This document shows, piece after piece, positions 1 through 62,992 of a stretch of 64,000 bases of DNA (positions within the stretch are counted from its first letter, which is position 1; each line of letters opens with the position of its first letter). Source of the stretch: Macrostomum lignano (lineage: Eukaryota); assembly GCA_002269645.1 (NCBI GenBank), contig NIVC01000036.1, positions 62,001 to 126,000 on the forward strand, written 5' to 3'. The notes beneath the pieces are model-generated. The model searched no databases. It had not been told where the DNA came from and saw only the letters and a program-made list of their open reading frames with translations. The position numbers and the translations under genes were made by a program.

Positions 1-722
1 ATACTGGAGCTGAGTCGTCAGAGACCAAATGAGACTCATGACACTTCAAATTATATCAAACTCTATCTGCAGTGTGCCAGTGCGTCCGCTGATTAGCACA
101 AACGTTCTCAGCACCATCAATTCAATTTCTCAAGAGATGCTGAAGCTCTTATCTAACTCTCTCTTCGCGTCCGCGATTTTGTAGCAGACATTTCTCCTTG
201 AGCTCTCGAGATGACATGTACTTATACTTTATACTCAACCCGCAACCCAGCAGAGTCAATGAAAGTTTCTCACCCACTTAAAAGTCAAACAAGCGAGCAC
301 TTGAAGAGACTTGAAGTTGCATGGCTTGGGACGCAAGGCAGGTGCTGCAGACTCAGACAGCCCTGTCAGTAGTTATTCAATCTGACACCAACAGACAAAC
401 AGGTGCAAGATCGTTCATTCAAAACTCAATATTTATTCTGGCAATACAGCTCTGTCGTCTTGTTGATTCTGAAGGAGCACGAGGTTCTCAAATTGACTTT
501 ATTTAGTCGCGTCTGGCAAACAGCAAGCCAGCCGGGACTCTTGCGCTTGCAGAGCCCTCTGCAATTTTTCAGCATTCTGTGCTTGAAGAACCTGTGAAAT
601 TGAGAGCTTGGAAACTGAATCGAAGAAACTGCAGTGAATGGCATCCGCAAACATCGCGCCGCGGCTGCTTCTGCTGCTGCTGCTGCTGCTGCTGCGTGTG
701 TGTGTGTGTGTGTGTGTGCCGC

Positions 723-3700
723 TCAACTCATGCGCTTCCATCTTTCTTTGATCCAGTTCCAGAACCTGTAGGCAGCGTCTGGTTGGTTCCACAGATCGCA
801 CAGGCCGGTGATGTTGTACTCCTGCCTCCTTTTCCACGTAGCCGGGCAATCCATTAAGTGCGAGTTGGATTCTTCGCCATCTCCACATAGCCTGCAGCTG
901 TCACTGTCCTGGTTGCCAAGTCTCTTGCGGAACTGGTTCAGTTCGAGGGAGTGTCCGGTACGGAAGCGTCTGAAGCTCACTGCTTCGCTGCGGTCTGCAT
1001 AGTCCTTCTTCCAGTTGCTTTTGGGGCCTTTGCTGTAGGTCTCTTTGCTGCGTTGGTGGCTCCATTCCTTCGCTCTGGTCAGGTCTCGGTAGATGGATCT
1101 CTTAACCGGGTTGGCAAGCACACCGGCTCCTCCAGCTGGTCTGCCGGCTGCGGCCTTTGCCGTGGTGTCGGCCTCTTCGTTCCCGCTGAGGCCACAGTGG
1201 GCCGGGACCCAGCAAATGATGAGCCGGCCGTTGGTCTCACTGGCTGCCTGCAAGTTGTTGGTGATTCTATTGGCTATCGGATTACTTCTCCTGCTGTGGA
1301 GGAGCTGGAGGCTGCTGAGGCTGTCCGTGGCAATGCAGGTGCTTTTTCCCCGGCCATGGTGACGGATCCAATCAGTGGCTGCTTGCAGTGCGTGCAGCTC
1401 AGCCTGGAGTGAGCTGCAGGGCTTGCCGGCGTCGACCTCAATACGGGTTTGTGTGTCCCAGCCGTCGATCCCTTTGGCTGTCACAACGACTCCGCCACCA
1501 CCTTTACCGTCACTGCTAACTGATCCGTCCGTGTAGAGGATGAGGTCTGCGTCGGCTGCGCAGCTTTGGATGATGTTCTCGGCCAGGTTCCTGTTGTCAG
1601 CTTCGCAAAGCTTGCGCCGGCCTTCCATGTGAATCGTGAATTTCCTTTCCTCCCATGGGGCCAGCGTGGCAGGTTGTTCATCCTTCTCCACTGTGATGTT
1701 GAGCAGACCATGGTCATCAAGCAACTCTTTAGCTCGGGCTCTCCAGCCTTTTCTTTTAAGCCTCTGCTTTGGCCCTTCGCCAACCAGCTCTCTTCTGATG
1801 CTACCGGGGGGCTGTCGTCTGAGGCGGTCGAATTTCTCGGCCCATCTGGCCTTGCTGCACACTTTGAGGGGCTCAAGGCCGCTTTCCATACTGAGCGCTT
1901 CAACCGGGGTAGTAGCCATGAGACCAGTCATGATCCTTTCAGCTGAGCGCTGTATCACTTCGAGCTTGTGCCAGCTGCTTTCGCTGATCCAAGGCATCCA
2001 TGCTGGAGCGCCGTACAGGATCTTGCTCTTAATAAGAGCTTCGTACGTGATTTTAATTAGCTCCAGGCTCCAGCCCCAGTCACTGCCAGCCAGTTTCCTT
2101 AATATGTTAACTTTCTTAAGGCATGCCTCTTTGATGTTGTTAACGTGCGTCTCGAACTTCAGCGTTCTGTCGAAGGTGAGCCCCAGGAACTTCGCGGTTG
2201 GGGCCCAGCTGATAGTGCTGCCGTACATCGTGAAGGTGGTGTCTTCTAGGCTGGTTCTAGTGCTAGTCGTGGACAGAAGCGTGAGGGAACACTTGCTTAC
2301 TGCAATCGGCATAAGCCAGTTATTGCTCCAAGTCTCCGTGAGCTGGATGGCTTTATCCATACTCGCGCGCATCTGGTCTTGCCTGCCAGAGGTCCAGATG
2401 GCGAGGTCGTCCGCGAAGCCGCTAACTTTGACCCCCTCGACCGCGCTGAGACCTTCTAGGAGGTCGTCAATGTAGACCAGGAACAGCAGCGGCGACAGGA
2501 CGGAGCCTTGCGGCAGGCCTTGCTCGAGCACTTTAAGCTTGCTGTCCTTGCCATTGAAGTTGACTTTAGCTAATCTGTGACTCAGCCACGCTTGTATCCA
2601 TCTGATCGAGAGCCTGCCCACTCCTTTGCTGATCAGTTTCCAGATGAGGCCGGTGCGGAGCACTTTGTCGAACGCTCGCTCGAAATCCACCAGTAGCAAA
2701 AGCGTATAGATTTTCTTCTGAAAGCCGTCATCGGCGTCCTGCGCGAGCCTGAGTAGTTGGTCCTCCGTGGATCTGCCAGCCCTAAACCCAGCCTGGCAGT
2801 CGCTAAGGAGCCCTTTGCTCTCGAGGTGGTAACTAATTCTGTTGGTGATAACTCTTTCAAGCCATTTGCCTAGGCAGGATGTGAGGCTGATCGGCCTGTA
2901 TGAGGGTATGCATTCAGCATCTTTGCCATGCTTCAGGAGCGGGATGATTCTAGCCGTGCGCCAGCTCTGGGGCACTTCGGCCTGCCTGTAGGAGTCGTTG
3001 AAGAGGCTAGTGATGACAGGTAGGCTGTTGGATGGCAATTCCTTGAGGAGCCTGGGGTGGATAAGGTCCTCGCCGGCCGCTTTGTTACCATCCATGGCTT
3101 CAAGCGCACTCACGACTTCGGACATGAGGATGGGCTGATCCATTTCTGCTTCCGCTGAAGTTTCCATCTCACGCAGGGCAGCGTTCGCACTACTTCTAAT
3201 TTTTCTTTGCTTTTTGGGAATAAAGTAGTTGCTGACTCGCGCGTATTCCTTCACAAATGCGTTGGCTTTGGCTCTGTCCGACAGGAAGGTCTTGCCACGA
3301 TGCTGGATGGATTTCCCCACTTGGTCTTTGGCGCTTTTGCCATTGAGGCGTTTGACTACTGACCACATTTTTGCACTGCTCGCGTTGTTACTCAGGTGGT
3401 TTCGCCCATCCTCCTCCTTGCTTTTCCTAATCTCAGACTTGAGCCGTTGTTCTTTTTCGGCCCATAGCTCCGGTTCAGCTGAGGCGTCGCACTTGCCAAG
3501 TTCCTCCAGGGCTTCCCTCACCTCGTCGTTGATGGAGGACCGGTTCCGGGTTGTGCGCGCAATGGTACCGACCGACGCTCTCGCAGCATTGATGATGATA
3601 TCCCTGATCTTTTTCTCATTCTCCTTAACGCATCCAGCGCCGCAAATCGATTCTGCCAGGCCGGCTTCGATGTTGTCTCTGTAGCCTGTCCAGTCAGCGG

Positions 3701-5693: not shown

Positions 5694-5727
5694 AGCACCC
5701 CACTTGGCGGGTAGGAGGTCGTGCTGC
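5649..5727 (-). ncRNA. Candidate HDV-like self-cleaving ribozyme at the LINE 5' end
   Basis: Minus strand: P1 GCAGCAC/GUGCUGU with G1-U wobble; P2 ACCUCCU/AGGAGGU; P3 CCC/GGG; L3 GCCAAGU, whose CC pairs with the GG after P1' (P1.1); P4 CGCGAU/AUCGCG; J4/2 ...CGAA with the putative catalytic C at 5659. Confidence 0.75.
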
Positions 5728-6136
5728 TGCTGCTGCTGCTGAGCTCACCCGGTTTGTCTTCGGGCCAGGTGTTCCAAGCCGTGTCTGGCTTTCTCTGCAT
5801 CCGGCCAGAGTTTGTCAGAAACGAGCCTCGAGCCAGGTCGGACATCGAGTGCTCGAACCTTTGCAGCATGGAGCCGCGCTGTCAGGCGTTTAGCCTGGCT
5901 GACGGTGTTCGACAAGTGCAGCAAGTCGGTGAGGGACTGCGGCTGCTCCAGGAGAGGCCGGGTGTTCGTGAAGCAGCAGCCGGGACTCGAGCCGGGTGCG
6001 CTGTGTCCGTCCGACTTCGGAGACGACCACTGCGGAGTGAAGTACAAGCTGTTCAATGCGATCAACACCTGGGCAGTGCAGAGACAGAGGTGCGAGTCGG
6101 AGAGCGGTCTGGTGATCATGGCGGACGTGATCGACA

Positions 6137-6832
6137 CAAGGACGACTTAAGTAGAAGGACGGGAAACCTCGTTTCTTAGAAAATTTTTGAAGGCACTTTT
6201 TCCCGAAAATACACTACGGAGATAGGAAATTTTCATTTTTTCAGCACAAAAATTGCTATTACTTTTGATAGGAGGCAGATCCAGTGCTCATCTTTTGATA
6301 TGTTTTGCCTTTTTTATTGCTCTATCGATATTTATAAAGCTTTTCGTTCAGAAAACTAGGATTCTATGTAAATTTTTTATTCTACGTATATTTTCACGTG
6401 TCTTGTGATTTAAATACATTAGAATGCCACGGCTCGGCTCTTTGGTTTTAGAAGTCTATTTTATCATTCTTAACTGACTGTTTAGCAAATATTCGTAACA
6501 GAGATGATAAAACAGGTTCATAAAAGCAAATATTCGAGCTGTGTCATGCATTTTTGTGATTTTTAGATACAGGAAATGTACGTAGAATAAAAAATTTACA
6601 TAGAATCCTAATTTTCTGAACGAAAAGCTTTATAAATATCGATAGAGCAATAAGAAAGGCACAACATATCAAAAGATGAGCACTGGATCTGCCTCCTATC
6701 AAAAGTAATAGCAATTTTTGTGCTGAAAAAATGAAAATTTCCTATCTCCGTAGTGTATTTTTTCGGGAAAAAGTGCCTTCAAAAATTTTCTAAGAAACGA
6801 GGTTTCCCGTCCTTCTACTTAAGTCGTCCTTG
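6137..6832. mobile_element. Fold-back MITE (696 bp) with 8-bp TSD
   Basis: TSD GATCGACA at 6129-6136 and 6833-6840. TIR CAAGGACGACTTAAGTAGAAGGACGGGAAACC..., with inverted arms of roughly 250 bp or more. Confidence 0.92.
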
Positions 6833-7153
6833 GATCGACAGCGCCGAGCTGGCTGCCATCGGACAAGTTTTCAACACGAAGGGTGGCGGTGTCTCCATGT
6901 GGGTCGGCGGCTTCCAGACTCCGGGCAGTGCGGAGCCCGACGGAGGCTGGCGCTGGGTGGCCTGCAACATCAGATTCGACGCCAGCCTGTGGGGCGGAGC
7001 GGAGCCCAGCAACGGAGGAGGCAAAGAGGACGCAATCTTTGCTCACTTTGGTCTTGGTGACGCCTACCATCCCAGGACAAAGAACGGGCTGTGCGAGTGT
7101 GTCGCCGTTTGACTAAAATGAGTACACTTGTGGATTGGTGAAAACTGGTGGTA

Positions 7154-8838: not shown

Positions 8839-8910
8839 ATTTGGCAGCTAGATTCTGTCTTCATTGCCCCCCCCCCGTTCAAAAAACATGCATTTGATAT
8901 GCAGTTACTA

Positions 8911-10001: not shown

Positions 10002-10366
10002 TTAATTAAGATTAAGGTAGGCAGTCAATTTTCATGGACCCAGTGACCATTGCTGGCATTGAAGAAGCTCGGTCTCAGCCACCTGCTCGCCAGACTGGAG
10101 CAGGCATTTAACACTGTTCATTTGGTCTGTAGGCGACTGCAACTCATGCAGCTCATCCGTTTGGCCAATTGGCGAAATTTCCAGGTCCAAAAATTAAAGC
10201 AGAGCCCTTCGATTGGCCAGAGCAGAGCTACTCAATGAGGCTGTAAACATCAGGGCGGCCATAAAGTGCGTCTCTTTGTGCAAAAAGATTTTGCCATCAT
10301 TTTCAACTCAGCCCCAAAACTGCAGCTAACAAATTCCAAGCCACATAGAAACTGAGAGTGTCGAAC

Positions 10367-11106
10367 ATGACATCAATGAAAGTTGTGTCGCTGCTGCTGC
10401 TGCTTCTGCTGAGCTCACCCGCTGTGTCCCTGGCCAGGTGTTCCACGTCATCAACGGCTCGCTCTGCATCCGGCCCGAGTTCGTCAGAAACGAGCTTCTG
10501 GCCAAGTTGAGCGTCGAGTGCTCGCTGCTCTGCAGCATGGAGCCGCGCTGTCAGGCGTTCAGCCTGGCTGACGGTCCGTGCCAGCTGTTCGTGTTCGACA
10601 AGTGCAGCAAGTCGGTGAGGGACTGCGGCTGCTCCAGGAGAGGCCGAGTGTTCGTGAAGCGGCAGACGGGACTCGAGCCGGGTGCGCTGTGTCCGTCCGA
10701 CTTCGGAGACGACCACTGCGGAGTGAAGTACAAGCTCTTCAATACGACCAACACCTGGACAGTGCAGAGACAGAGGTGCGAGTCGGAGAGCGGTCTGGTG
10801 ATCATGGCGGACGTGATCGACAGCGCCGAGCTGGCTGCCATCGGACAAGTTTACAGCATGAAGGCTGGCGGCGTTGCCATGTGGGTCGGCGGTTTCCAGA
10901 CTCCGGGCAGTGCGGAGCCCGGCGGAGGCTGGCGCTGGGTGGCCTGCAACATCAGCTTCGACGCCAGCCTGTGGGGCAGCGGAGAGCCCGACAACCTGTT
11001 CAAAAGCTCCGAGGACGCGGTTTCCGCCCGAACCTTTCTGGGAGACGCTTACAGCTTTGATGCAATCAGAACCGGCCTGTGCGAGTGCCTGTCGCCCTTC
11101 AATTGA
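10367..11106 (+). pseudogene. PAN+CTLD copy 2 (class B), 1-nt frameshift after the signal peptide (real lesion or assembly indel)
   Basis: ATG at 10367 gives MTSMKVVSLLLLLLLSSPAVS. It has GTGTCCCTGG (3 C) where intact paralogs have GTGTCCCCTGG. The remainder is open to SPFN*. Confidence 0.85.
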
Positions 11107-12094
11107 CTGTTAAAACACTTTAAAAGAATTTTAGATCGGACTTTATGATTTCTACGACCTAAGCACCGTTGGCGTCCTAAATTGTTATGATTACTGCTCC
11201 ACAAACTTTAAATATAGTGGACAGTGTAATGAGACAAATATCCAAAATGAAAAAATGATATAGATTTTTCTTGATCTTACATGCGATTTTCAACATGGCC
11301 GCCGGCTCTCGACTGAACTGCCAAGCGGCAACGCTATAGTCTAACCTACAGGACTCTGACTAGCTCAATGTTCTTAGCAATCCCAAACTCTGCATGTCAT
11401 TCTGCTTGGCACCCCAGCCGACGACGAGACTGGGCAAGTTTGCTGAGGACACTGAGGAGAACTGCTGAGGGGATCACTGCAGATTGTCGAAAGGATCATT
11501 TCAGTCTGCAGAGGGGACAAGCTGTAAACTACTGAGACAGTTTCTCAAGACTTATGAGCGTCGTACCGGTATAGCTGCAACCTGCTGAGTGGATAACTGC
11601 GGACTGATTGGGGGGGGCAGACTTCTGAGGATAATAACTATCTACAGAGTTTTGAGCGGACAATAACTTTTGAGGATTAATTGCCAGTTGTTGGAGGAAT
11701 TACTGCAGACTGCTGAGTGAATTATTTTTGCTTGCTGATGGGACAATTCTAGCCCTAATTTTAGTGCTGAGGTTATAAATGCTTAATGTTGATAAAAGTT
11801 GTATTGACTGCAAAGTGGATAACTGCAGGCTGCTAAGAGATGACTGCAGTCTGTTTTGCGGGATTAGATGAAGGGATCATTTCAGGTTGTTGTGGTGATA
11901 ACTGCCGATTTCTGAGGGTTAACTTCAAACTGCTGAACTTACTAAACCTCTAGAAATGCTAAACTTCTTAAATAGCATATGGTTTATTTTGACCATCTGT
12001 CAATAGGCACAATAACCGCAGTAGACAGGCAGTTACAGGCATGGACTGAAGTTGGCGGTTCGAGTCTGCATTGGAGCAAGGAATTTATCTTTGT

Positions 12095-14250: not shown

Positions 14251-14254
14251 GGTG

Positions 14255-20103: not shown

Positions 20104-20242
20104 CCTGTGGGGCAGCGGAGAGCCCGACAACCGCTACGGAGGCACCGAGGACGCGGTTTCCGCCCGAACCTTTCTGGGAGACTTTTGCTGGTTCAATGCA
20201 GTCAGAACCGGCCTGTGCGAGTGCCTGTCTCCGTTCAGCTGA
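20104..20242 (+). pseudogene. Isolated 3' fragment of the PAN+CTLD gene (binding-loop region only)
   Basis: LWGSGEPDNRYGGTEDAVSARTFLGDFCWFNAVRTGLCECLSPFS*; the upstream sequence is unrelated. Confidence 0.9.
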
Positions 20243-20918
20243 CAGTTAAAAGCACTTGAAGGAATCTTGGATCAGAATTTGATTGGCATGCCTCGCTCGC
20301 GTCTCTGACTGCGAGACAGTTGAATAAGACAAACATCCGAAATAAAAAATGTATTAATTCTAAAAAATTGATTGTATCAATATTAGAAAATTGTATCGAT
20401 TGCCTTCAAAACATTTCGAGTGTTGCGTCCTTCTACTTAAGTTGTCCTTGCTTTTTCGATGCGCCAGGGCGGTCGCCGATCAATTAGCACTAAAGAGATT
20501 TACAGATCGGCTTTACGGTCGTCATTGGATCTAGCTACGGTCTAGCGGTAAATTGTGTAGAGGTTCATTCTTCATTCATTCTTAAAATGCTACTGTTAAG
20601 TAAGGTAAAGCAAGCATTTTCAGCAGAATTAAAGCTTGAATCATGATCGTGTAGTGATCCGCTAGTTGGTGTTAGGCGTCGCACTTTGTCAGCAGTCGCC
20701 CTTGCCCTCGCCCTCGCCCTGGGTTGCTGTCTGCCGCTGGTCAGCTTCCCGCCTCCCTCCTTTTGTCTGTCTGTTGCTGCTCCCTTCCCTCGTTTTGCCC
20801 CTTGTTTCTCAGCCCTCAGCTTCTCTGCTGTGGGCTGTCTCTGTTTCGCTCGGTCTTTGTTTCCTCTGTTCTTTGAGTCCTAAAGTGCAGTAAACATGTT
20901 TACTGCACTTGTTGGCCC

Positions 20919-25325: not shown

Positions 25326-26640
25326 ATAAGCACAATGCATATTTCGCACTGATCAGTAATTTCTATGTGTACATGTTCAAAGAGTTTAGCGTGTCGAATG
25401 GAAGCAAAGAGTTGGAGAGAATAGCTAACTTTGACAACTTTGAGAACCCCGATTACGTCCAGTTGGGGAGTGGAGCTGGCTTAATCCCAATGAGCAAAAG
25501 GGAAATGTGAATGACTGCAGTTACAAAAAAAGAAAGATGTAACTATCCTCTTGCAGGTGCAAACGATGCTGCTAAGAACCCACAGTTTAGGTCTGTAGAC
25601 ATTTTTTACCTTGGAGATTTATGAGTTGTTTCTGTAATAGTTTTATTCTGTTGACAATTCGTTAGCTACACATTTAGGTTCACTAGAGTAAATTGAGATC
25701 AAGGAATTTGAACAGGAGCTGAGCTGACCATACAAGGCTGGTCAATATGAGAGGAAAATAAAGCTAAATATGATCAACAACTCGTCAAGTAAAGTTTGGG
25801 TTAAAAAAAGAAAACTAAATAGTAGGTTAGAAAAATGGAAGCTATAATCGAAAGAATAATAAATAATGTTGTCTCCCACGCAGACACGCATTCCAGTTAC
25901 TGTTATTGGAAGAATTACTAAATCAAACGAAATTTTCATAGAAAAAAATAGAACAGCCTATTCAATTGGATGCTGAGGCGAATTATCATGTTTATCTTAA
26001 TGACTTTACAGGTTGGTCGAATGGCCCTACTGTGACCCTGATCCTAGCTAATAGCAAGTTCTACTACAAATAAAAAGGTGAGGCAGCTGAGGCAATTTCC
26101 ATTTACCGTAGGAACACAGGGTGTTGAGATACTTATGATTACTTCTTGGAAAAGGTTTTACGACAACAAAAAAATTCCTGTTAAACTAACCTATGATGTC
26201 ATTGTGATGAGATTGGTCCTACAAGTTCATAAGGACGCTGAGATTAAGTTTAAAAAACAACACATGGTACAATGAGTTGAGTTTTGACGCAAAAGTTTAC
26301 AAACACGGTTTGTTCTTGGCACCAAATATTGCTGATATTGTTAAAGGTTTAAATAGTTTAATTCGCAGCAATTTGAGTCTCGATTGAGTCTATGAATGTA
26401 AACGAACCAACATACTGTTCAACATTTCAACCTTTATGAATTCTATTCTATTCCAATTGTAGAGCAGATGGTATTGAATTTCAGGTCTTTGACCACTTCT
26501 ATCAATTCTAAAGTCTTGTTAAACTCTCGCATTCGTCTGAGCTCTCCTGCAGATTTGGCTGCATCAATTCCCCCCCCCCTTTCACAGCTGTGGCTATTGA
26601 ACCTGTTGTTACTATCTTTAACTACATTGCCCAGTGAGCC

Positions 26641-26855
26641 GGCTTCCAGACTCCGAGCAGTGCGGAGCCCGACGGAGGCTGGCGCTGGGTGGCCTGCAAC
26701 ATCAGCTTGGACGCCAGCCTGTGGGACAGCGGAGAGCCCGACAGCCGCTTCGGAGGCACAGAGGACGCCATTGCCGCCCGAAGCATTCTGGGAGACGCTT
26801 GTGTTGCGGTGCAGTCAGAGCCGGCCTGTGCGAGTGCCTGTCTCCTTTCGACTGA
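26641..26855 (+). pseudogene. Isolated 3' fragment of the PAN+CTLD gene
   Basis: GFQTP..EPDGGWRWVACNISLDASLWDSGEPDSRFGGTEDAIAARSILGDAC; 1-nt deletion in the last loop. Confidence 0.9.
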
Positions 26856-27323
26856 CAGTTAAAAGCAATTAAAATAATTTTAGAGCTGAACTTAAACTAT
26901 GCAGCTTTGGCGTCCCAATACCAACGCAAGCATTGAGACAGTTCAAGGAGTTCCAACTAAAAGCAGGATTTTCTGCTTCAAGCGCTTTCATGCCTGGAGC
27001 CAGCTGCGAGCATCCACAGACCTGCGCTGTCGATGGCTTTCTTGATTTAAAGCTCCTTCCTTGCTTGCTGAGAGCCTCTGAAAGTCATAAAAAGCAATAT
27101 AAATGGTAAAAAATTGTTTTTTGTAGCATTGTTCTGTTGCACAATTCCCAATTTCAAAGATTTAAAAAGATATATTCGATTGGCCAGAGCAGAGCTGCTG
27201 CTCACTGAGGCTGCCCTTCAAACATCAGGGCGGCAATAAAGTGCGTCTCTTTCTGCAAGAATATTTTTGCAGTTTATTTTTAACTCAGCCCAAACAGCCC
27301 ATAAAAAGTTAAGAGCGTCGAAC

Positions 27324-28068
27324 ATGACATCAATGAAAGTTGTGTCCCTGCTGCTGCTGCTGCTGCTGCTGATGCTGAGCTCACCCGCTGTGTCCCCAGG
27401 CCAGGTGTTCCACGCCATCAACGGCTCGCTCTGCATCCGGCCAGAGTTCGTCAGAAACGAGCCTCAAGCCAGGTCGGACATCGAGTGCTCGCTGCTCTGC
27501 AGCATGGAGCCGCGCTGTCAGGCGTTCAGCCTGGCTGACGGTCCGTGCCAGCTGTTCGTGTTCGACAAGTGCAGCAAGTCGGTGAGGGACTGCGGCTGCT
27601 CCAGGAGAGGCCGGGTGTTCGTGAAGCAGCAGCCAGGACTCGAGCCGGGTGCGCTGTGTCCGTCCGACTACGGAGACGACCACTGCGGAGTGAAGTACAA
27701 GCTGTTCAATGCGATCAACACCTGGGCAGTGCAGAGACAGAGGTGCGAGTCGGAGAGCGGTCTGGTGATCATGGCGGACATGATCGACAGCGCCGAGCTG
27801 GCTGCCATCGGACAAGTTTACAACACGAAGGGTGGCGGCGTCTCCATGTGGGTCGGCGGCTTCCAGACTCCGGGCAGTGCGGGAGCCCGATAGAGGCTGG
27901 TGCTGGGTGGCCTGCAACATCAGCTTCGACGCCAGCCTGTGGAACAGCGCAGAGCCCGACAACAGAGGAGGCAGCGAGGACGCAGTATTTGCTCGCTTAG
28001 GTCTTGGTGACGCCTACCAAGGAACGTCAAGGAACGGGCTGTGCGAGTGCGTGTCGCCGTTCGAATGA
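27324..28068 (+). pseudogene. PAN+CTLD copy (class B signal peptide) with a +1 frameshift at about 27880
   Basis: GCGGGAGCCC versus GCGGAGCCC in paralogs. The downstream frame continues WCWVAC...EPDNRGGSEDAVFARLGLGDAYQGTSRNGLCECVSPFE. Confidence 0.85.
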
Positions 28069-29108
28069 CGCACCGATGAGCTCAATATGCTTGTTTTGAA
28101 TTTAGGCTAAATTTTCGTATGCCCTTCATCACCCGACGTGTACTCACATGAGTCTGTACGATTGTTCCGCCGAAACTTTTCTCGTCAATATTCCCGTGCT
28201 TTTTTACCGACAATATTTGCTACTGCCCTCTGGCTTTGTTCAACTCTTCTGACGAATGTTGCGGAACTACGCAGTCCTTAAGTATCACAATTAAACTATC
28301 CTAGCTAGTCGAAAGACGACGCTGTAATGTCTCTTTTGAACAAATAAAAGGAACTTACTTATTATCGTCACAATGAAATGGCACTTTTCGAAAAAAACAG
28401 GCTTATAATGCTTACTACTATTAATTTATTTATTGTTAGATATGGTTCTTTGGTCTCAGGTTAGTTGACAGGCGCACAGTGGGAGGTCAGTGCAAGGGGC
28501 AGAGGAGGCAGTGGGGTGTCCCAGTTTAGGAGAGACAGCGCAAAGTTATTTTTTTGGCTGACTGCAGGGCTCAAGGTCTCATATTTGCTGTGTGTCTCAT
28601 TATCTAAAACCTACCTGCTTGTCGTAGAACTGACGACATTCTTTTCGATCAGAAAAATGCGCTCGTAATTACAGTCTCTGCTTTAGCTCCAAATACAATG
28701 GATTTTAAATTGCTTTGCCGCTTCCAGTTATTTTAGCCTGCCTTCAATGTCAGTAGATTGCTAGTCCCGATGCTAAAGTTGATGTCCGTCTTTAAGCGGC
28801 CAAGAAGCCAATCCGCTTGTGATTGCTACGAACATTGAACTAGTCGGTTTCCTGTAGGTTAAACTATAGCGTAGCCGCTTGGCAGTTTAGTCGAAAGACG
28901 GCAACTAAAATGTGTTGAAAATCGCATTTAAAATAAAAAAAAGTCGTTACATTTTTTGTTTGGATATTTATCTCGCTAAACTGCCTCAATGCTGTCTCAA
29001 TGCTATTCTACTTAAAGTTTGTGGAGCAGTAACCATAACAGTCTGAGACGTCAACGCTGCATAATAATCAAAGGTCAGATCCAAAATTCTCTTAAGTCCT
29101 TTCAACAG

Positions 29109-29852
29109 TCAGTTAAACGGCGACAGGCACTCGCACAGACCGGTTCTGACTGCGCCGCGACTGTCAGCGTCTCCCAGAAAGGTTCGGGCGGCCACCGCGT
29201 TCTCGGTACCTCTGTACCGGTTGTCGGGTTCTCCGCTGCCCCACAGGCTGGCGTCGAAGCTGATGTCGCAGGCCACCCAGCGCCAGCCTCCGTCGGGCTC
29301 CGCACTGCCCGGAGTCTGGAAGCCGCCGACCCACATGGAGACGCCGCCACCCTTCGTGTTGAAAACTTGTCCGATGGCAGCCAGCTCGGCGCTGTCGATC
29401 ACGTCCGCCATGATCACCAGACCGCTCTCCGACTCGCACCTCTGTCTCTGCACTGCCCAGGTGTTAATCGCATTAAAGAGCTTGTACTTCACTCCGCAGT
29501 GGTCGTCTCCGAAGTCGGACGGACACAGCGCACCCGGCTCGAGTCCCGGCTGCTGCTTCACGAACACTCGGCCTCTCCTGGAGCAGCCGCAGTCCCTCAC
29601 CGACTTGCTGCACTTGTCGAACACGAACAGCTGGCACGGACCGTCAGCCAGGCTGAACGCCTGACAGCGCGGCTCCATGCTGCAGAGCAGCGAGCACTCG
29701 ATGTCCGACCTGGCTTGAGGCTCGTTTCTGACGAAATCTGGCCGGATGCAGAGAAAGCCAGACATGGCTTGGTACACCTGACCTGAAGACACACCGGGTG
29801 AGCTCAGCAGCAGCAGCAGAAGCAGCTGCGGCGCGATGTTTGCCGATACCAT
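29109..29852 (-). CDS. Secreted PAN/apple + CTLD protein, intact (247 aa, class A 5' end)
   Basis: Poly-Leu signal peptide; IECSLLCSMEPRCQAFSLADGPCQLF (PAN-like Cys pattern); WVGGFQ..WRW..W.SGEPDN..GLCE (CTLD). Confidence 0.85.
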   Translation of the reverse strand: MVSANIAPQLLLLLLLSSPGVSSGQVYQAMSGFLCIRPDFVRNEPQARSDIECSLLCSMEPRCQAFSLADGPCQLFVFDKCSKSVRDCGCSRRGRVFVKQQPGLEPGALCPSDFGDDHCGVKYKLFNAINTWAVQRQRCESESGLVIMADVIDSAELAAIGQVFNTKGGGVSMWVGGFQTPGSAEPDGGWRWVACDISFDASLWGSGEPDNRYRGTENAVAARTFLGDADSRGAVRTGLCECLSPFN

Positions 29853-30664
29853 TGGGGAGCTTCTTCAGACCTTCGGCAAGCACAGAACTGCAGCGGGCTC
29901 TACAAACGAATGAAGTCCTCGCTTAAAGCTGTTTGCCAGACGCGACTAAATAAAGTCAAATGGGAAACTCGGCTTCTAAACCAACAAGACGACAGCTGGA
30001 TTGTCGCAGTAAATATTGAGTTTTGAATAAGAAATTTTACACCTGTTCGTCTGCTGCTGTCAGCTTGAGTAATACGACTGACAGGCTGTCTGAGTCTGCA
30101 GCACCTGCCTTGCATCCCAAGCCATCGAAAATTCAGCTTTAACTCTCATCAAGTGCTCGCTTGATTGATTTTTAAGTAGGCGAGAAATTTTCATCGATTC
30201 TGTTGCCAATAGGATAAAAAATAGGATAGGATAAAATAAAATAGAATCCTGCTTTCGACGCCATTGTTGTGTTTTATGCGTTGACACTGCGTTGAGCCGA
30301 AGGCTGTTATCAGAAGAGCATGGCTTAAGTTGCATGTATATTTTGTTTAACGATATAACTCGAGGCAAGCCTTAATAGAGTCAGTTGGTATAGCTGCTTG
30401 GGACACAGACAAAATAATTAACGCTGGGGCAACGACTGAAAATAAAAGTACATTGGATTCGAATCGGTATACAACACATCTCTCGGAGAGGAACATCTGC
30501 TAGAAGATCGCGGAGAGAGAGTTGGAGAGGAGCTCCAGCATCTTTTGAGAAATTGGATTGATAGTGCTGGAAACGTTTGTGTTAAAAGCAGCCGACACAC
30601 TGGCACACCGCTGATAGAGTTTGATATAATTTGAAATCTTATGTGTCTGATCATTTGGTCTCAG

Positions 30665-30895: not shown

Positions 30896-30989
30896 ATTAC
30901 AGTCTAAGTGAAAGTTCGGCTGCAGTTGGGCGTTGATATTCATAAGCCAAACAGCAGACTTTGCTGCTGAGTTTCTGAACTTCATCTGC

Positions 30990-31272
30990 CTCTCCTCTCC
31001 CCTCCTGGAACAGCCGCAGTCCCTCACCGACTTGCTGCACTTGTCGAACACGAACAGCTGGCACGAACCGTCAGCCAGGCTGAACGCCTGATAGCGCGGC
31101 TTCATGCTGCAGAGGTTTGAGCACTCGATGTCCGACCTGGCTCGAGGCTTGTTTCTGACGAACTCTGGCAGAGAAATCCAGACACGGCTTGGAACACCTG
31201 GCCTGAAGACACACCGGGTGAGCTCAGCAGCAGCAGCAGAAGCAGCGGTGGCGCGATGTTTGCCGATGCCAT
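30990..31272 (-). pseudogene. 5' fragment of PAN+CTLD (class A), with a 7-nt deletion and 3' truncation
   Basis: MASANIAPPLLLLLLLSSPGVSSGQVFQAVSGFLC then frameshift; homology ends after CGCSR. Confidence 0.88.
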
Positions 31273-31712
31273 TCGCTGTAGTTTCTTCGATCCAGTTTCC
31301 AAGCTCTCAATTTCACAGGTTTTGCAGCACATAACGCTGAAAATTGCAGAGGCCTCTGCAAGAGCAAGAGTCCCGGCTGGCTTTCTGTTCTCCAGACGCG
31401 ACTAAATAAAGTCAATTAATTTATTTAGCTGCTCACCAGACTGGAGCAGACATTCAACACTGTACATTTGGTCTGTAGGCGACTGCAGCTCATGCAGCTC
31501 ATCCGTTTGGCCAATTGGCGAAATTTCCAGGTCCAAAAATTAAAGCAGAGCCCTTCGATTGGCCAGAGCAGAGCTACTCAATGAGGCTGTAAACATCAGG
31601 GCGGCCATAAAGTGCGTCTCTTTGTGCAAAAAGATTTTGCCATCATTTTCAACTCAGCCCCAAAACTGCAGCTAACAAATTCCAAGCCACATAGAAACTG
31701 AGAGTGTCGAAC

Positions 31713-32453
31713 ATGACATCAATGAAAGTTGTGTCGCTGCTGCTGCTGCTTCTGCTGAGCTCACCCGCTGTGTCCCCTGGCCAGGTGTTCCACGCCATCA
31801 ACGGCTCGCTCTGCATCCGGCCCGAGTTCGTCAGAAACGAGCTTCTGGCCAAGTTGAGCGTCGAGTGCTCGCTGCTCTGCAGCATGGAGCCGCGCTGTCA
31901 GGCGTTCAGCCTGGCTGACGGTCCGTGCCAGCTGTTCGTGTTCGACAAGTGCAGCAAGTCGGTGAGGGACTGCGGCTGCTCCAGGAGAGGCCGGGTGTTC
32001 GTGAAGCAGCAGCCGGGACTCGAGCCGGGTGCGCTGTGTCCGTCCGACTTCGGAGACGACCACTGCGGAGTGAAGTACAAGCTCTTCAATACGATTAACA
32101 CCTGGGCAGTGCAGAGACAGAGGTGCGAGTCGGAGAGCGGTCTGGTGATCATGGCGGACGTGATCGACAGCGCCGAGCTGGCTGCCATCGGACAAGTTTT
32201 CAACACGAAGGGTGGCGGCGTCTCCATGTGGGTCGGCGGCTTCCAGACTTCGGGCAGTGCGGAGCCCAACGGAGGCTGGCGCTGGGTGGCCTGCAACATC
32301 AGCTTCGACGCCAGCCTGTGGGGCAGCGGAGAACCCGACAACCGGAACGGAGGTACCGAGAACGCGGTGGCCTCCCGAACCTTTCTGGGAGACGCTGACA
32401 GTCGCGGCGCAGTCAGAACCGGTCTGTGCGAGTGCCTGTCGCCGTTTAACTGA
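31713..32453 (+). CDS. Secreted PAN/apple + CTLD protein, intact (246 aa, class B)
   Basis: Open from MTSMKVVSLL to SPFN*; same domain motifs as the other copies. Confidence 0.85.
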   Translation: MTSMKVVSLLLLLLLSSPAVSPGQVFHAINGSLCIRPEFVRNELLAKLSVECSLLCSMEPRCQAFSLADGPCQLFVFDKCSKSVRDCGCSRRGRVFVKQQPGLEPGALCPSDFGDDHCGVKYKLFNTINTWAVQRQRCESESGLVIMADVIDSAELAAIGQVFNTKGGGVSMWVGGFQTSGSAEPNGGWRWVACNISFDASLWGSGEPDNRNGGTENAVASRTFLGDADSRGAVRTGLCECLSPFN

Positions 32454-33067
32454 CTGTTGAAAGGACTTAAGAGAATTTTGGATCTGATCTTTGATTATTA
32501 TGCAGCGTTGACGTCTCAGACTGTTTTGGTTACTGCTGCACAAACTTTAAGTAGAATAGCATTGAGACAGCATTGAGGCAGTTTAGCGAGATAAATATCC
32601 AAACAAAAATGTAAGAACTTTTTGTTGATTTTAAATGCGATTTTCAACACATTTTAGTTGCCGTCTTTCGACTAAACTGCCAAGCGGCTACGCTATAGTT
32701 TAACCTACAGGAAACCGACTAGTTCAATGTTCGTAGCAATCACAAACGGATTGGCTTCTTGGCCGCTTAAAGACGGACATCAACTTTAGCATCGGAACTA
32801 GCAATCTACTGACATTGAAGGCAGGCTAAAATAACTGGAAGCGGCAAAGCAATTTAAAATCCATTGTATTTGGAGCTAAAGCAGAGACTGCATTTTTCTG
32901 ATCGTAAAATAATGTCAGATCTACGACAAGCAGGTAGGTTTTAGATAATGAGACACAGCAAAAATGAGACCTTGAGCCCCGCAGTCAGCCAAAAAATTAA
33001 CTTTGCGCTGCCTCTCCTAAATTGGGACACCCCACTGCCTCCTCTGCCCCTTGCACTGACCTCCCAC

Positions 33068-33659
33068 CGTTGCTGGGCTCTCCGCTGCCCCACAGGCTGG
33101 CGTCGAAGCCGTCGGCTCCGCACTGCCCGGAGTCTGGAAGCCGCCGACCCACATGGAGACGCCGCCACCCTTCGTGTTGTAAATTTGCTGCACATGAGCC
33201 AGCTCATTGCCGTCGATCACGTCCGCCATGATCACCAGACCGCTCTCCGACTCGCACCTGTCTCTGCACTGCCCAGGTGTTGATCGTATTGAAGAGCTTG
33301 TACTTCACTCCGCAGTGGTCGTCTCCGTAGTCGGACGGACACAGCGCGCCCGGCTCGAGTCCCGGCTGCTGCTTCACGAACACCCGGCCTCTCCTGGAGC
33401 AGCCGCAGTCCCTCACCGACTTGCTGCATTTTTCGAAAACGAACAGCTGGCACGGACCGTCAGCCAGGCTGAACGCCTGGCAGTGCGTCTCCCTGCTGCA
33501 GAATGAAGAGCACTGGATGCTCGATTTAGCGTGTGAATAGGTTCTTATGAACTCAGGCCGGGTGCAGAGCGAGCCGTTGATGGCGTGGAACACCTGGCCT
33601 GGGGACACACCGGGTGAGCTCAGCAGCAGCAGCAGGGACACAACTTTCATTGATGTCAT
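33068..33659 (-). pseudogene. Divergent PAN+CTLD copy (class B) with frameshift, internal deletion and 3' truncation after EPSN
   Basis: PAN patch TYSHAKSSIQCSSFCSRETHC; frameshift at about 33260; WRWVACNI deleted; fused to the 3' flank of the 31713 copy. Confidence 0.88.
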
Positions 33660-34589
33660 GTTCGACGCTCTCAAGTTCTTATGGGCTGTTTGGGCTGAGT
33701 TGAAAATAAACTGCAAAATATTTGCAGAAAGAGATGCACTTTATGGCCGCCCTGATGTTTGAAGCCTCAGTGAGCATCTCTGCTCTGGCCAATCCAAGGG
33801 ATCTGTTATAATATTTGGACTTGGGAATTTCGCCAATTGGCCAAACGGATGAGCTGCATGAGCTGCAGTCGCTTGTAGACCAAATGTGCAGTTTTGAATG
33901 TCTGCTCCAGTCTGGTGAGCAGGTGGCTGAGCTTCTCCAGTGCGAGCAGGTGTCAGCGGGTCCATGAAAATCGATGCCGACCCTAACGCTAAACCTAAAC
34001 CCTAAGCAAGTTGCAAGTTCCTAGTCATGTGCAAGTATTGCCAAGAACAAGATTGAAAAAATTATTTTATTGTGTTTTTTAAACGGATTTCACAATTTGC
34101 TATTCGACTCAGCGTTTGAATGGGGTGAATTAGTGGCAGGGGGCTGTGTGCACTCTGGCGCACTTTAAGCGACATTGCCACACAACCGGCGAGAGGCATT
34201 ACTGCTTATTCCATCGAATCCCCTGAGCAGGCAAACAGGCGCGCGGATACGTACGCAGTCATACTGTACCAACACTTCTAACAAACTGCAACTGTAACGA
34301 CTGACTCCAACCAATTTTTAACTGCTTGCCTTCTAATATCTATATCTCAAGACGACTAATGAAGATTTTGTTAACGGTGTGTATTTGTTATTTACAATTG
34401 TTTGCCATACCATAGGCACTAGTAGCAGAGTTATAAGTCAGGAGTAAATCAATAGGTCTCCAAGCTTCTATCCACGTTTTGGTACTTGAAATGAATCCTG
34501 ATGAAAATTCTCCCCCATCCCCCATGCCCCCGTGGTTCGCTGTAAGCTTTGAAAATTTGGGCTGAACCTCCTAACGAACAGAGCTCTAA

Positions 34590-34760
34590 GGAAGGCAAGT
34601 TATATCAAAAGATGAACATTGGGTCTGCCTCCTATCAAAGGAAATAACCATTTTTGTTCTGAAATAATGAAAACCCATCTCCGTAATGCTTTTTTCGGTA
34701 AAACCTGCCTCCTAAAATTTTCCAAGAAACAGCTTCCGTCACACTTGAGTAGTATAAGGA
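34590..34760. mobile_element. Diverged relic of the 6137-6832 MITE right arm
   Basis: ATATCAAAAGATGA.C..TGG.TCTGCCTCCTATCAAA ... ATCTCCGTA.TG matches 6667-6755. Confidence 0.6.
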
Positions 34761-39225: not shown

Positions 39226-39770
39226 CCCCCCACATATCATAGATCGACAGAAAACATCAGTAAAGCAGGGGCCATCAACCATGTCAGAAAAATCCGAGAC
39301 AATGACTTTGTCCAGCCAGTCGCTGTCGGAGTGGGCCTTTTAAACTTACTGCTGGAGCGTGAATAGGAATGACTGGTGCAACGGAGCGGCAAGAAGAGCA
39401 CGAAACAATCAGAAGCAGGATTTTCTGCTTCAAGCGCTTTCATGCCTGAAACCAGCTGCGAGCCTCTGCAGACCTGCGCTGTCGATTGCTTTCTTGCTTT
39501 TAAGCTCCTTCCTTGCTTGCTTATTGAGAGCCTCTGAAAGTTATAAAAAGCATATATATAACGGCAAGCAATTGTTTTTTGTAGCATTGCTCCACAGCAA
39601 AATTCCCAAGTCCAAATATTATAACAGATCCCTTGGATTGGCCAGAGCAGAGCTGCTCACTGAGGCTTCAAACATCAGGGCGGCCATAAAGTGCGTCTCT
39701 TTCTGCAAATATTTTGCAGTTTATTTTCAACTCAGCCCAAACAGCCCATAAAAAGTTGAGAGCGTCGAAA

Positions 39771-40508
39771 ATGACATCAATGAAAGTTGTGTCCCTGCTG
39801 CTGCTGCTGCTGAGCTCACCCGCTGTGTCCCCTGGCCAGGTGTTCCACGCCATCAACGGCTCGCTCTGCATCCGGCCAGAGTTCGTCAGAAACGAGCCCC
39901 TGGCAAAGTTGAGCGTCGAGTGCTCGCTGCTCTGCAGCATAGAGCCGCGCTGTCAGGCGTTCAGCCTGGCTGACGGTCCGTGCCAGCTGTTCGTGTTCGA
40001 CAAGTGCAGCAAGTCGGTGAGGGACTGCGGCTGCTCCAGGAGAGGCCGGGTGTTTTTGAAGCAGCAGCCAGGACTCGAGCCGGGTGCGCTGTGTCCGTCC
40101 GACTTCGGAGACGACCACTGCGGAGTGAAGTACAAGCTCTTCAATACGACCAACACCTGGACAGTGCAGAGACAGAGGTGCGAGTCGGAGAGCGGTCTGG
40201 TGATCATGGCGGACGTGATCGACAGCGCCGAGCTGGCTGCCATCGGACAAGTTTTCAACACGAAGGGTGGCGGCGTCTCCATGTGGGTCGGCGGCTTCCA
40301 GACTCCGGGCAGTGCGGAGCCCGGCGGAGGCTGGCGCTGGGTGGCCTGCAACATCAGCTTCGACGCCAGCCTGTGGGGCAGCGGAGAACCCGACAACCGG
40401 TACAGAGGTACCGAGAACGCGGTGGCCGCCCGAACCTTTCTGGGAGACGCTGACAGTCGCAGCGCAGTCAGAACCGGTCTGTGCGAGTGCCTGTCGCCGT
40501 TCAACTGA
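39771..40508 (+). CDS. Secreted PAN/apple + CTLD protein, intact (245 aa, class B)
   Basis: Open from MTSMKVVSLL to SPFN*. Confidence 0.85.
   Translation: MTSMKVVSLLLLLLSSPAVSPGQVFHAINGSLCIRPEFVRNEPLAKLSVECSLLCSIEPRCQAFSLADGPCQLFVFDKCSKSVRDCGCSRRGRVFLKQQPGLEPGALCPSDFGDDHCGVKYKLFNTTNTWTVQRQRCESESGLVIMADVIDSAELAAIGQVFNTKGGGVSMWVGGFQTPGSAEPGGGWRWVACNISFDASLWGSGEPDNRYRGTENAVAARTFLGDADSRSAVRTGLCECLSPFN

Positions 40509-50595: not shown

Positions 50596-50631
<36 letters not shown>

Positions 50632-62277: not shown

Positions 62278-62992
<715 letters not shown>

What the first reader, a model, noticed from the sequence alone, without database searches (positions are those of the whole stretch)
638..40508. 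Ten-copy cluster of intronless PAN + C-type-lectin genes with variation focused on the ligand-binding loops
Seen: the central block (CQAFS...GVKYKLF...RCESESGLVIMAD) is almost invariant even at silent sites. Differences pile up after EPxN (GGGK, LFKSS, RYGGT, RFGGT, RGGS, RYRGT, RNGGT), after LGD (AYHPRTKN, AYSFDAIRT, FCWFNAVRT, AYQGTSRN, ADSRGAVRT, ADSRSAVRT) and in one PAN patch (EPRARSDI, EPQARSDI, ELLAKLSV, EPLAKLSV, YSHAKSSI). Known: those CTLD positions form the long loop and beta-4 binding site. Inference: a secreted recognition repertoire (immune, mucus/adhesive or reproductive) under diversifying selection with concerted evolution of the scaffold.
Basis: partly seen in the sequence, partly recalled or inferred. 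Interest (0 to 1): 0.8.

Follow-up and report, generated by a model that had tools for sequence, protein, structure and literature searches.

The report
Flatworm PAN–C-type-lectin gene cluster, mostly decayed
A flatworm-type genome segment holds ten copies of a small secreted two-domain (PAN/apple plus C-type lectin) gene, only three of them intact, and their identical middles and different ends are explained by copy-to-copy sequence exchange, not by proven selection for new binding sites.

Summary
The sequence observation is real. [quoted passage not shown] The domain calls needed family profiles and an AlphaFold model, because the proteins alone fail Pfam thresholds.

"Ten genes" overstates it. 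Three copies are intact (c6, c8, c10). Two carry one homopolymer frameshift each (c2, c5). Five are disrupted or fragments (c1, c3, c4, c7, c9). Positions 638-5717 are a LINE, not part of the family.

The core (codons 61-205) is nearly identical at silent sites (dS 0.02-0.13). The variable ends are just as divergent at silent sites (dS 0.3-1.6), with dN/dS 0.16-0.57 between C-terminal types. Tree-based omega is 0.89 in the two CTLD loops, 0.42 in the neighbouring framework and 0.48 in the core. The loop excess is not significant (P=0.11) and not above 1.

The copies are mosaics (PHI P<0.0002). A distant homolog shows the core's silent sites are free to change (pS 0.62). Best reading: a birth-and-death cluster with gene conversion homogenising the core. 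Diversifying selection is unproven and function is uncharacterised. Closest named relatives are Macrostomum lignano proteins (55% identity or less).

The parts
5718..6136 (+). c1, 5' part of a pseudogene (codons ~9-153). Its start and promoter are replaced by the adjacent LINE, and it has a 17-bp deletion in the PAN domain.
6137..6832 (.). 696-bp foldback/TIR element inserted into c1. It has perfect TIRs of 32 bp or more and an 8-bp target-site duplication GATCGACA (6129-6136 and 6833-6840).
6833..7112 (+). c1, 3' part of the pseudogene (C-terminal type D3, 2-bp deletion near the end). It is followed by a 1.7-kb (GACT)n array.
10083..11388 (+). c2 duplication unit. The CDS equivalent is 10367-11106. 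A 1-bp deletion in a CCCC run (about 10428) puts the ATG and signal peptide out of frame. Type P1/A1-B1-D2.
20104..20311 (+). c3, 3' fragment (last ~47 codons plus shared 3' flank), type D2.
26640..26917 (+). c4, 3' fragment (last ~72 codons, 1-bp deletion, plus 3' flank), type D2. It lies directly upstream of c5.
26961..28077 (+). c5 unit. The CDS equivalent is 27324-28068. A 1-bp insertion (GG to GGG near 27881) creates a premature TAG. Type P1/A1-B2-D3.
28476..29866 (-). c6 unit. Intact CDS 29109-29852 (247 aa). Type P2/A2-B2-D1. Its 3' flank and CDS form a 1353-bp inverted duplication with c8 (94.8% identity).
30999..31288 (-). c7, 5' fragment (codons ~5-95, 7-bp deletion), type P2/A2-B2. 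It lies head to head with c8.
31429..33070 (+). c8 unit. Intact CDS 31713-32453 (246 aa). Type P1/A1-B1-D1.
33069..33986 (-). c9 pseudogene (ATG at 33659). It has a 2-bp deletion at codon 135 and a 41-bp deletion, and it is truncated at codon ~213, exactly where the c8 duplicon ends. Its PAN patch is divergent (YSHAKSSI).
39413..40517 (+). c10 unit. Intact CDS 39771-40508 (245 aa). Type P1/A1-B1-D1. This was the reference copy, used for the structure model.

Best explanation
This is a lineage-specific, TE-riddled cluster of a small single-exon gene for a secreted PAN/apple + C-type-lectin-like protein. It evolves by birth-and-death plus inter-paralog gene conversion.

At least two 5' types exist, covering the promoter, signal peptide and N-terminus: P1/A1 and P2/A2. 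There are two to three PAN-patch types (B1, B2, and the c9 variant) and three C-terminal types (D1, D2, D3). These are joined in different combinations onto one recently homogenised core (codons ~61-205).

The 'invariant middle, variable ends' pattern therefore reflects different coalescence times along the gene. The core was exchanged recently. The ends are old and escaped exchange. It is not a replacement-specific burst in the binding loops.

The divergent C-terminal modules evolved mostly under purifying selection in their framework, with near-neutral loops. So they were once, or still are, functional binding-site variants. Today only three nearly identical-loop genes are demonstrably intact.

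Inferred, not shown: the product is an extracellular glycan- or protein-binding factor. The CTLD keeps E-P-D, E and D of the Ca2+ site-2 ligands but has Gly in place of the WND Asn. The ligand, tissue and role are unknown.
For: Domains and secretion:
- The family profile hits more than 160 solved CTLDs (mannose receptor CRD4 2.6e-16, mincle 1.7e-15).
- Relatives pass Pfam Lectin_C (2.4e-11) and PAN_1 (2.1e-7).
- The N-terminal profile hits only PAN/apple structures: Eimeria MIC5 at 1.3e-5, then HGF N domain, factor XI, MIC4.
- The AlphaFold model has pLDDT 84.3 and pTM 0.79. Foldseek top hits are CEL-I, rattlesnake lectin, langerin and CD23, with target TM 0.74-0.81.
- The N-terminus is hydrophobic and the mature protein has 14 Cys.

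Decay:
- Lesions were catalogued per copy.

Different ages along the gene:
- Core dS is 0.02-0.13. Between C-terminal types dS is 0.3-1.6, with dN/dS 0.16-0.57.
- The silent-site contrast between core and C-terminal framework is significant: Fisher P=2.8e-7 (c10-c5) and 0.010 (c10-c2).
- Synonymous changes per synonymous site on the trees are 0.14 in the core and 1.13 in the C-terminus.

Mosaicism:
- Among 57 informative sites, 593 of 1596 site pairs are incompatible. PHI is 0.188 against a permuted mean of 0.372, reached in 0 of 5000 permutations.
- All four combinations of A1/A2 with D1/D3 and of B1/B2 with D1/non-D1 occur.
- Flank types recombine too.

No nucleotide-level constraint on the core:
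- c10 against a 46%-identical homolog gives core pS 0.62.
- The run of identical codons at CSKSVRDC is not significant (P=0.13).

Selection:
- Framework omega is 0.42 (P=0.0025 for below 1). Loop omega is 0.89 (not different from 1). Core omega is 0.48.
Against: - Loop omega is twice the framework value, and the loops carry in-frame indels. All three C-terminal types switch at the same place, around the EPDN motif. Selection to keep distinct binding modules would produce exactly this.
- Counts are small (14 loop codons, 8 sequences). Most lineages are pseudogenes or possible pseudogenes, which pushes omega toward 1 in either direction.
- Silent sites are near saturation between types, so parsimony and NG86 ratios are rough.
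- Recombination violates the single-tree assumption.
- No expression, population or read-level data were available.
- Paralogs elsewhere in the genome, which could be donors, were not seen.
Confidence: 0.65

Rival explanations
1. This is a secreted recognition repertoire whose CTLD long-loop and beta4 residues and one PAN patch are under diversifying (positive) selection, while the scaffold is kept uniform by concerted evolution.
For: - Variation is strongly non-uniform.
- Variable residues map next to the Ca2+/sugar-site motifs of the model.
- Loop omega of 0.89 exceeds framework omega of 0.42. One pair (c2-c3) has loop pN/pS 1.8 against 0.11 in the framework, Fisher P=0.037 uncorrected.
- The loops carry in-frame indels.
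- All types share a common conversion boundary near EPDN.
Against: - Silent divergence rises as much as replacement divergence in the variable segments.
- Omega is never significantly above 1. The loop-versus-framework contrast gives P=0.11.
- Most variants sit in pseudogenes or fragments. The three intact genes have nearly the same loops.
Confidence: 0.25
2. Assembly artefact. The copies, or their mosaic structure, are haplotigs, collapsed or expanded repeats, or chimeric joins in a repeat-rich polyploid flatworm assembly.
For: - The region is full of TEs and satellites.
- The two single-base frameshifts (c2, c5) lie in homopolymer runs, as long-read errors typically do.
- No exact protein match was found in public assemblies.
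Against: - The copies lie in both orientations within one contiguous window. They have unique flanks, different TE insertions, private indels and 5-17% divergence.
- Duplication units are only 0.9-1.35 kb, not long collinear blocks.
Confidence: 0.07
3. The core is invariant because of nucleotide-level function, such as an overlapping antisense or alternative-frame gene or an RNA element, not because of recent exchange.
For: - Antisense ORFs of 255-260 aa and +1-frame ORFs of 150-160 aa span the copies.
- The CSKSVRDC codons are 24/24 nt identical to a distant homolog.
Against: - The antisense ORF is a by-product of codon usage. GC3 is 0.81 and there are no TTA, CTA or TCA codons after codon 23.
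- Core silent sites are 62% different from the distant homolog.
- The identical-codon run is not significant (P=0.13).
- There is no Rfam hit.
Confidence: 0.03

Closest known systems
Uncharacterised Macrostomum lignano 'C-type lectin domain-containing' and 'Apple domain-containing' proteins (UniRef A0A1I8...; P0001-P0003, P0005, P0006, P0008-P0010)
   Same: They share the signal-peptide-PAN-CTLD layout, the length (202-273 aa) and invariant blocks (CSKSVRDCGCSRRGR, CGVKY, CESESGL..MAD, LCEC.SPF). P0005 (3072 aa) contains 3-4 such modules, each preceded by a signal-peptide-like stretch. This suggests a fused model of tandem genes, that is, clustering in that species too (inference).
   Different: Identity is at most 55%, so the window comes from another species or a distinct subfamily. 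None of these proteins has a known function or a published description that I could find.
Canonical Ca2+-dependent C-type lectin CRDs (CEL-I of Cucumaria echinata, rattlesnake venom lectin, langerin, CD23, mannose receptor CRD4, mincle)
   Same: The fold matches (target TM 0.74-0.81). It is long-form, with an N-terminal Cys hairpin, a WIGL-like WVGG, and an EPx motif followed by an acidic residue and a downstream D.
   Different: Sequence identity is about 20%. The motifs are EPD instead of EPN/QPD and LGD instead of WND, so the Asn ligand is lost. The canonical C2-C3 disulfide cysteines are absent, and there is an extra Cys in the long loop (C193) and a CEC pair at the end. Sugar binding is untested.
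PAN/apple-domain binding modules (Eimeria MIC5, Sarcocystis SML-2, Toxoplasma MIC4, HGF N domain, factor XI/prekallikrein apple domains)
   Same: The N-terminal domain profile hits only these structures (best 1.3e-5). The predicted layout is beta-sheet plus a central helix with Cys.
   Different: Similarity is weak (Pfam PAN_4 14-17 bits against a threshold of 27 for the window proteins). There are eight cysteines rather than the usual six. It is fused to a CTLD.
Clustered immune or recognition gene families shaped by gene conversion and birth-and-death, for example sea-urchin Sp185/333 (SpTransformer) clusters (PMC5103432, PMC5491942); from my own knowledge also NK-receptor CTLD clusters and C. 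elegans clec clusters
   Same: These are small genes tightly clustered among short tandem repeats and duplications, with mosaic combinations of sequence blocks among paralogs and many pseudogenes.
   Different: The protein family is unrelated to Sp185/333. There is no evidence here for immune induction, extreme inter-individual diversity or editing. The resemblance is in evolutionary mechanism only.

Membership tests
C-type lectin-like domain (CTLD) superfamily | CTLD fold (two helices, beta1-beta5, long-loop region) | tested here: met
   AlphaFold model pLDDT 84.3. Foldseek against PDB gives CEL-I, langerin, CD23 and mannose receptor CRD4 at probability 1.00 and target TM 0.74-0.81.
C-type lectin-like domain (CTLD) superfamily | Sequence-profile membership (Pfam Lectin_C PF00059) | tested here: inconclusive
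   The window proteins alone give no hit at E of 10 or below. The family profile hits more than 160 solved CTLDs down to 2.6e-16 for a single domain. 10 of 24 relatives hit Lectin_C, best 2.4e-11.
C-type lectin-like domain (CTLD) superfamily | Conserved cysteines C1-C4 (plus C0-C0' in long form) | tested here: inconclusive
   C0/C0' (C108, C117), C1 (C137) and a C-terminal Cys (C238/C240) are present. Canonical C2 (beta3) and C3 are absent, and there is an extra C193 instead. Disulfide pairing could not be read from the model.
Ca2+-dependent carbohydrate-binding C-type lectins (functional CRDs) | Ca2+ site-2 ligands: EPN or QPD, Glu, and the Asn-Asp of WND | tested here: not met
   The motifs are E206-P-D208, E215 and G225-D226. 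The WND Asn is Gly in all window copies and absent in the close M. lignano relatives. More distant relatives keep ND. So 4 of 5 ligands are present and binding activity is unknown.
PAN/apple domain | Profile match to PAN families | tested here: inconclusive
   The window proteins score 14-17 bits on PAN_4 against a threshold of 27. Relatives hit PAN_1 at 2.1e-7. The N-terminal family profile hits only PAN/apple structures, best 1.3e-5.
PAN/apple domain | Fold: antiparallel sheet packing a central helix, stabilised by conserved disulfides | tested here: met
   The model has strands 25-32, 39-42, 61-65, 71-75 and 90-97 around helix 48-57, with pLDDT 83-94. Cysteines at C51, C55, C61 and C71 are invariant in the family. 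No separate fold search of this domain was possible.
   Loop omega is 0.89 (P for above 1 is 0.71), framework omega 0.42, core omega 0.48. The loop-versus-framework Fisher test gives P=0.11. Pairwise C-terminal dN/dS between types is 0.16-0.57. Power is low.
Concerted evolution / gene conversion among paralogs | Mosaic phylogenetic signal and locally depressed silent divergence not explained by constraint | tested here: met
   PHI P<0.0002 with 593 of 1596 incompatible site pairs. Core dS is 0.02-0.13 against 0.3-1.6 at the ends. Core pS to a distant homolog is 0.62.

The most novel reading that the evidence does not exclude
The dead copies and fragments (c1, c3, c4, c5, c2) are not just debris. 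They could be a germline reservoir of alternative binding-site cassettes (C-terminal types D2 and D3, and the PAN patches). These would be copied by gene conversion into the few promoter-bearing genes at a shared breakpoint next to the EPDN motif. That would give this flatworm lineage a rapidly reshuffled lectin repertoire, analogous in logic to pseudogene-templated diversification.
Probability: 0.07. Interest if true: 0.65.

Novelty: new member of a known kind. Interest (0 to 1): 0.3.

Why it matters
Lineage-specific expansions of secreted C-type lectins are a recurring theme in invertebrate immunity, adhesion and reproduction. Flatworm examples are almost unstudied.

This locus gives a compact, well-resolved case of how such a cluster turns over. 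It shows duplication units of about 1 kb, TE hits, pseudogenisation, and gene conversion that homogenises a core while older end modules persist.

It also shows that 'variable binding loops on an invariant scaffold' can arise from conversion-tract geometry alone, so silent sites must be checked before selection is inferred.

The PAN + CTLD pairing in a 25-kDa secreted protein, with a modified Ca2+ site and disulfide pattern, is a reasonable target for expression and glycan-binding work in Macrostomum-type models. Nothing here overturns current understanding.

Tried and rejected
- Pfam on the window proteins alone gave no Lectin_C hit and only sub-threshold PAN_4. I had to go through family profiles.
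- The first AlphaFold run, with an 8-sequence alignment, failed (pLDDT 32.8). It succeeded only with 28 sequences.
- Exact-protein look-ups of c10, c8, c6 and of M. lignano P0001 in public assemblies found nothing. So there is no expression or source-organism evidence. P0004 maps to a 925-bp Logan contig without context.
- Nucleotide-level constraint or an overlapping antisense gene as the cause of core invariance was rejected.
- An Rfam scan of the window gave no hits.
- A search for extra diverged copies with a family HMM on six-frame translations found none.
- Literature searches for this family in Macrostomum or other flatworms (adhesion, seminal fluid, PAN + CTLD) found no description.
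- I did not use the third homologous-protein search to pin down the species from the TEs, because it would not change the verdict.


Full report
**What is in the window.**
The window is eukaryotic and repeat-rich. Its transposable elements are:
- a full-length LINE ORF with endonuclease, reverse transcriptase and RNase H (723-5693, minus strand);
- a piggyBac-like transposase fragment (8911-9831);
- a Penelope-like RT with GIY-YIG (22289-23572) and a related element (36168-37457; the latter had no Pfam hit).

It also holds large micro- and minisatellites.

Three independent searches find the same ten loci related to one ~740-bp coding unit, and no others: tblastn with the intact protein, blastn with copy 10 plus flanks, and a family HMM run on the six-frame translation. 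I call them c1 to c10. Coordinates are in the parts list. The family occupies 5718-40517. The first 5 kb of the reported interval is the LINE.

**What the protein is.**
- The intact product is 245-247 aa.
- On its own it fails Pfam. There is no Lectin_C hit even at E=10, and PAN_4 scores 14-17 bits against a threshold of 27.
- The large protein database returns only four close hits, three of them Macrostomum lignano proteins at up to 55-56% identity.
- An exhaustive profile search returns 1191 relatives. The full-length ones share the same layout.
- The profile of 24 family members hits more than 160 solved C-type lectin domains, including mannose-receptor CRD4 (2.6e-16), mincle (1.7e-15) and codakine.
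- Ten of the 24 members pass Pfam Lectin_C (best 2.4e-11) and six pass PAN_1 (best 2.1e-7).
- A profile of the N-terminal 82 residues hits only PAN/apple structures: Eimeria MIC5 at 1.3e-5, then Sarcocystis SML-2, HGF N domain, factor XI, prekallikrein and Toxoplasma MIC4.

**Structure model.**
- An AlphaFold model built on eight sequences was useless (pLDDT 33).
- With 28 sequences it reached pLDDT 84.3 and pTM 0.79.
- Foldseek places its C-terminal half on CEL-I, rattlesnake lectin, langerin, CD23 and mannose-receptor CRD4, with target-normalised TM 0.74-0.81.
- The N-terminus is a typical hydrophobic leader. The mature protein has 14 cysteines.
- The single ORF aligns end to end with the M. 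lignano proteins, down to the C-terminal LCEC.SPFN.

So 'intronless, secreted, PAN + CTLD' is supported.

**The putative sugar/Ca2+ site is modified.**
The motifs are EPD in place of EPN/QPD and LGD in place of WND. The canonical beta3 and post-beta4 cysteines are missing. A new Cys sits at 193 and a CEC pair sits at the end. Lectin activity is therefore an open question.

**State of the ten copies (codon alignment; raw sequence).**
- Intact: c6, c8 and c10.
- c2 lacks one C in a CCCC run at codon 21. This separates the ATG and signal peptide from the rest.
- c5 has GG changed to GGG at codon ~183, giving a TAG five codons later. Both this lesion and the one in c2 are homopolymer changes and could be assembly errors.
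- c1 has lost its start to the LINE and has a 17-bp deletion and a 2-bp deletion. It is also split by a 696-bp foldback element with perfect terminal inverted repeats and an 8-bp target duplication.
- c9 has 2-bp and 41-bp deletions. It is cut off at codon ~213, exactly where the c8 duplicon ends.
- c3 and c4 are 3' fragments. c7 is a 5' fragment.

So there are three sure genes, two doubtful ones and five wrecks.

**Checking the observation.**
- Among the six long copies, third-codon-position diversity is 0.00-0.09 across codons 61-195. It is 0.20-0.38 in codons 1-45 and 211-245. First and second positions follow the same profile.

The non-uniformity is therefore real and large. But it is a property of all sites, not only of amino-acid-changing ones.

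**Selection tests.**
Nei-Gojobori estimates:
- Core dS is 0.02-0.13.
- For the last 40 codons, dS is 0.28-0.54 between types D1 and D2, and 0.95-1.97 between D3 and the other two types.
- dN/dS between C-terminal types is 0.16-0.57.
- The silent-site contrast between the core and the C-terminal framework is highly significant: P=2.8e-7 for c10-c5 and 0.010 for c10-c2.

Splitting the C-terminus into the two 'loops' (codons 210-214 and 227-235) and the remaining framework gives pairwise pN/pS of 0.5-1.1 in the loops, with one pair at 1.8. The framework gives 0.1-0.5 between types and about 0.9-1.1 in two within-type pseudogene pairs (c3-c4, c5-c1).

Parsimony counts on region-specific trees:

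| Region | Synonymous changes | Replacement changes | omega | Test |
|---|---|---|---|---|
| CTLD loops | 15 | 41 | 0.89 | not different from 1 |
| C-terminal framework | 23.5 | 31.5 | 0.42 | P=0.0025 for below 1 |
| PAN patch | 5.5 | 14.5 | 0.77 | not different from 1 |
| Core | 13 | 22 | 0.48 | P=0.031 for below 1 |

The loop-versus-framework contrast gives Fisher P=0.11. The loops are thus less constrained than their surroundings, but positive selection is not demonstrated. Many of the lineages counted are pseudogenes.

The significantly low framework omega does show one thing. The divergent C-terminal modules spent most of their history under purifying selection, that is, as working proteins.

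**Why the core is uniform.**
The copies are mosaics. The block types and their members are:

| Block | Type | Copies |
|---|---|---|
| 5' (promoter, signal peptide, first ~30 codons) | P1/A1 | c2, c5, c8, c9, c10 |
| 5' (promoter, signal peptide, first ~30 codons) | P2/A2 | c6, c7, and c1 as far as it survives |
| PAN patch | B1 | c2, c8, c10 |
| PAN patch | B2 | c1, c5, c6, c7 |
| PAN patch | own variant | c9 |
| C-terminus | D1 | c6, c8, c10 |
| C-terminus | D2 | c2, c3, c4 |
| C-terminus | D3 | c1, c5 |

- All four combinations of A1/A2 with D1/D3, and of B1/B2 with D1/non-D1, occur. The 3' flank types are shuffled again.
- Of 1596 pairs of informative sites, 593 are incompatible with a single tree. 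The PHI statistic (0.188 against a permuted mean of 0.372) was reached in 0 of 5000 permutations.
- The duplication units are short (0.9-1.35 kb) and lie in both orientations. One is a 1353-bp inverted pair, c6/c8, at 94.8% identity.

Nucleotide-level constraint does not explain the core:
- Against a 46%-identical homolog from a public transcriptome or assembly contig, core silent sites are 62% different.
- The locally identical CSKSVRDC codons are within expectation for a GC3 of 0.81 (P=0.13).
- The long antisense ORFs follow from the absence of TTA, CTA and TCA codons.

The simplest account is recent inter-paralog gene conversion or unequal exchange across the core, with the older end modules escaping it. 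Two causes are possible, and these data cannot separate them: conversion tracts may stop where similarity drops, or homogenising the binding-site modules may be disadvantageous.

**Comparison with what is known.**
- The closest named relatives are uncharacterised M. lignano 'C-type lectin' and 'Apple domain-containing' proteins.
- One of them, a 3072-aa model, contains three to four PAN-CTLD modules, each preceded by a leader-like stretch. It is probably a fused model of tandem genes. That suggests the family is clustered there as well.
- I found no paper describing the family.
- In mechanism, the cluster resembles other clustered recognition-gene families that evolve by birth-and-death and conversion among repeats, such as sea-urchin Sp185/333 (PMC5103432). 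There is no homology to that family.

**Verdict.**
This is a new, lineage-specific member of a well-known kind of locus. The 'concerted scaffold' inference is supported. 'Ten genes' and 'diversifying selection on the loops' are not supported by present evidence. Function, expression and assembly correctness remain untested.

Noticed in passing
window 6137-6832 (TSD 6129-6136 and 6833-6840); related piece at 34580-34730: A 696-bp near-palindromic foldback element with perfect TIRs of 32 bp or more (CAAGGACGACTTAAGTAGAAGGACGGGAAACC) and an 8-bp target-site duplication GATCGACA. This suggests a hAT-like MITE. It is inserted in codon ~153 of c1. An 81%-identical partial copy lies near c9.
   Followed up: partly
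window 7154-8839: A (GACT)n microsatellite of ~421 units (98% pure) starts 42 bp after the c1 stop. Similar tetranucleotide arrays occur at 12166-12223 and 62235-63116.
   Followed up: no
window 38333-39218; also 15885-16652 (-), 55912-56392, 57431-57658: A 30-bp minisatellite (29.8 copies, 95% matches; AGCCTTGACATCTCAGCAATTCCCCCAGTA) lies just upstream of the c10 unit. Diverged arrays of the same repeat occur at three other places in the window.
   Followed up: no
window 29019-29786 (+), 31761-32543 (-), 39953-40552 (-) and the +1-frame ORFs such as 39980-40453: Long ORFs (150-260 aa) lie antisense to, or frame-shifted within, each lectin copy. They are explained by codon usage (GC3 0.81, no TTA/CTA/TCA sense codons after codon 23) and are not evidence of overlapping genes.
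   Followed up: yes
window 39597-39770, 31518-31712, 10172-10366, 27143-27323, 33660-33833 (-) versus 29853-29990 (-) and 31243-31330 (-): There are two unrelated upstream (promoter/5'UTR) types. P1 has an inverted CCAAT box (GATTGGCC) and CATAAAG about 115 bp before the ATG (c2, c5, c8, c9, c10). P2 has TTGACTTTATTTAGTCGCGTCTGG (c6, c7). The intact c6 therefore uses a different 5' region from the intact c8 and c10.
   Followed up: partly
window 723-5693 (-): An apparently full-length LINE ORF of 1656 aa. Upstream of the endonuclease, RT and RNase H domains it carries PHD fingers and a weak, below-threshold PWWP-like match. Its 5' end abuts c1 at about 5714-5718.
   Followed up: no
window 44000-54600: This region has very strong GC and AT skew (GC skew up to 0.84). 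Kilobase-scale purine-rich GA-type simple repeats read as (SL)n or (RE)n ORFs. They are interrupted by a third Penelope-like copy at 51237-52208 (-).
   Followed up: no
M. lignano protein P0005 (UniRef A0A1I8H3Z5), residues 395-1427: This 3072-aa 'Apple domain-containing protein' contains 3-4 PAN-CTLD modules, each preceded by a signal-peptide-like hydrophobic stretch. It is probably an annotation fusion of tandem single-exon genes.
   Followed up: partly
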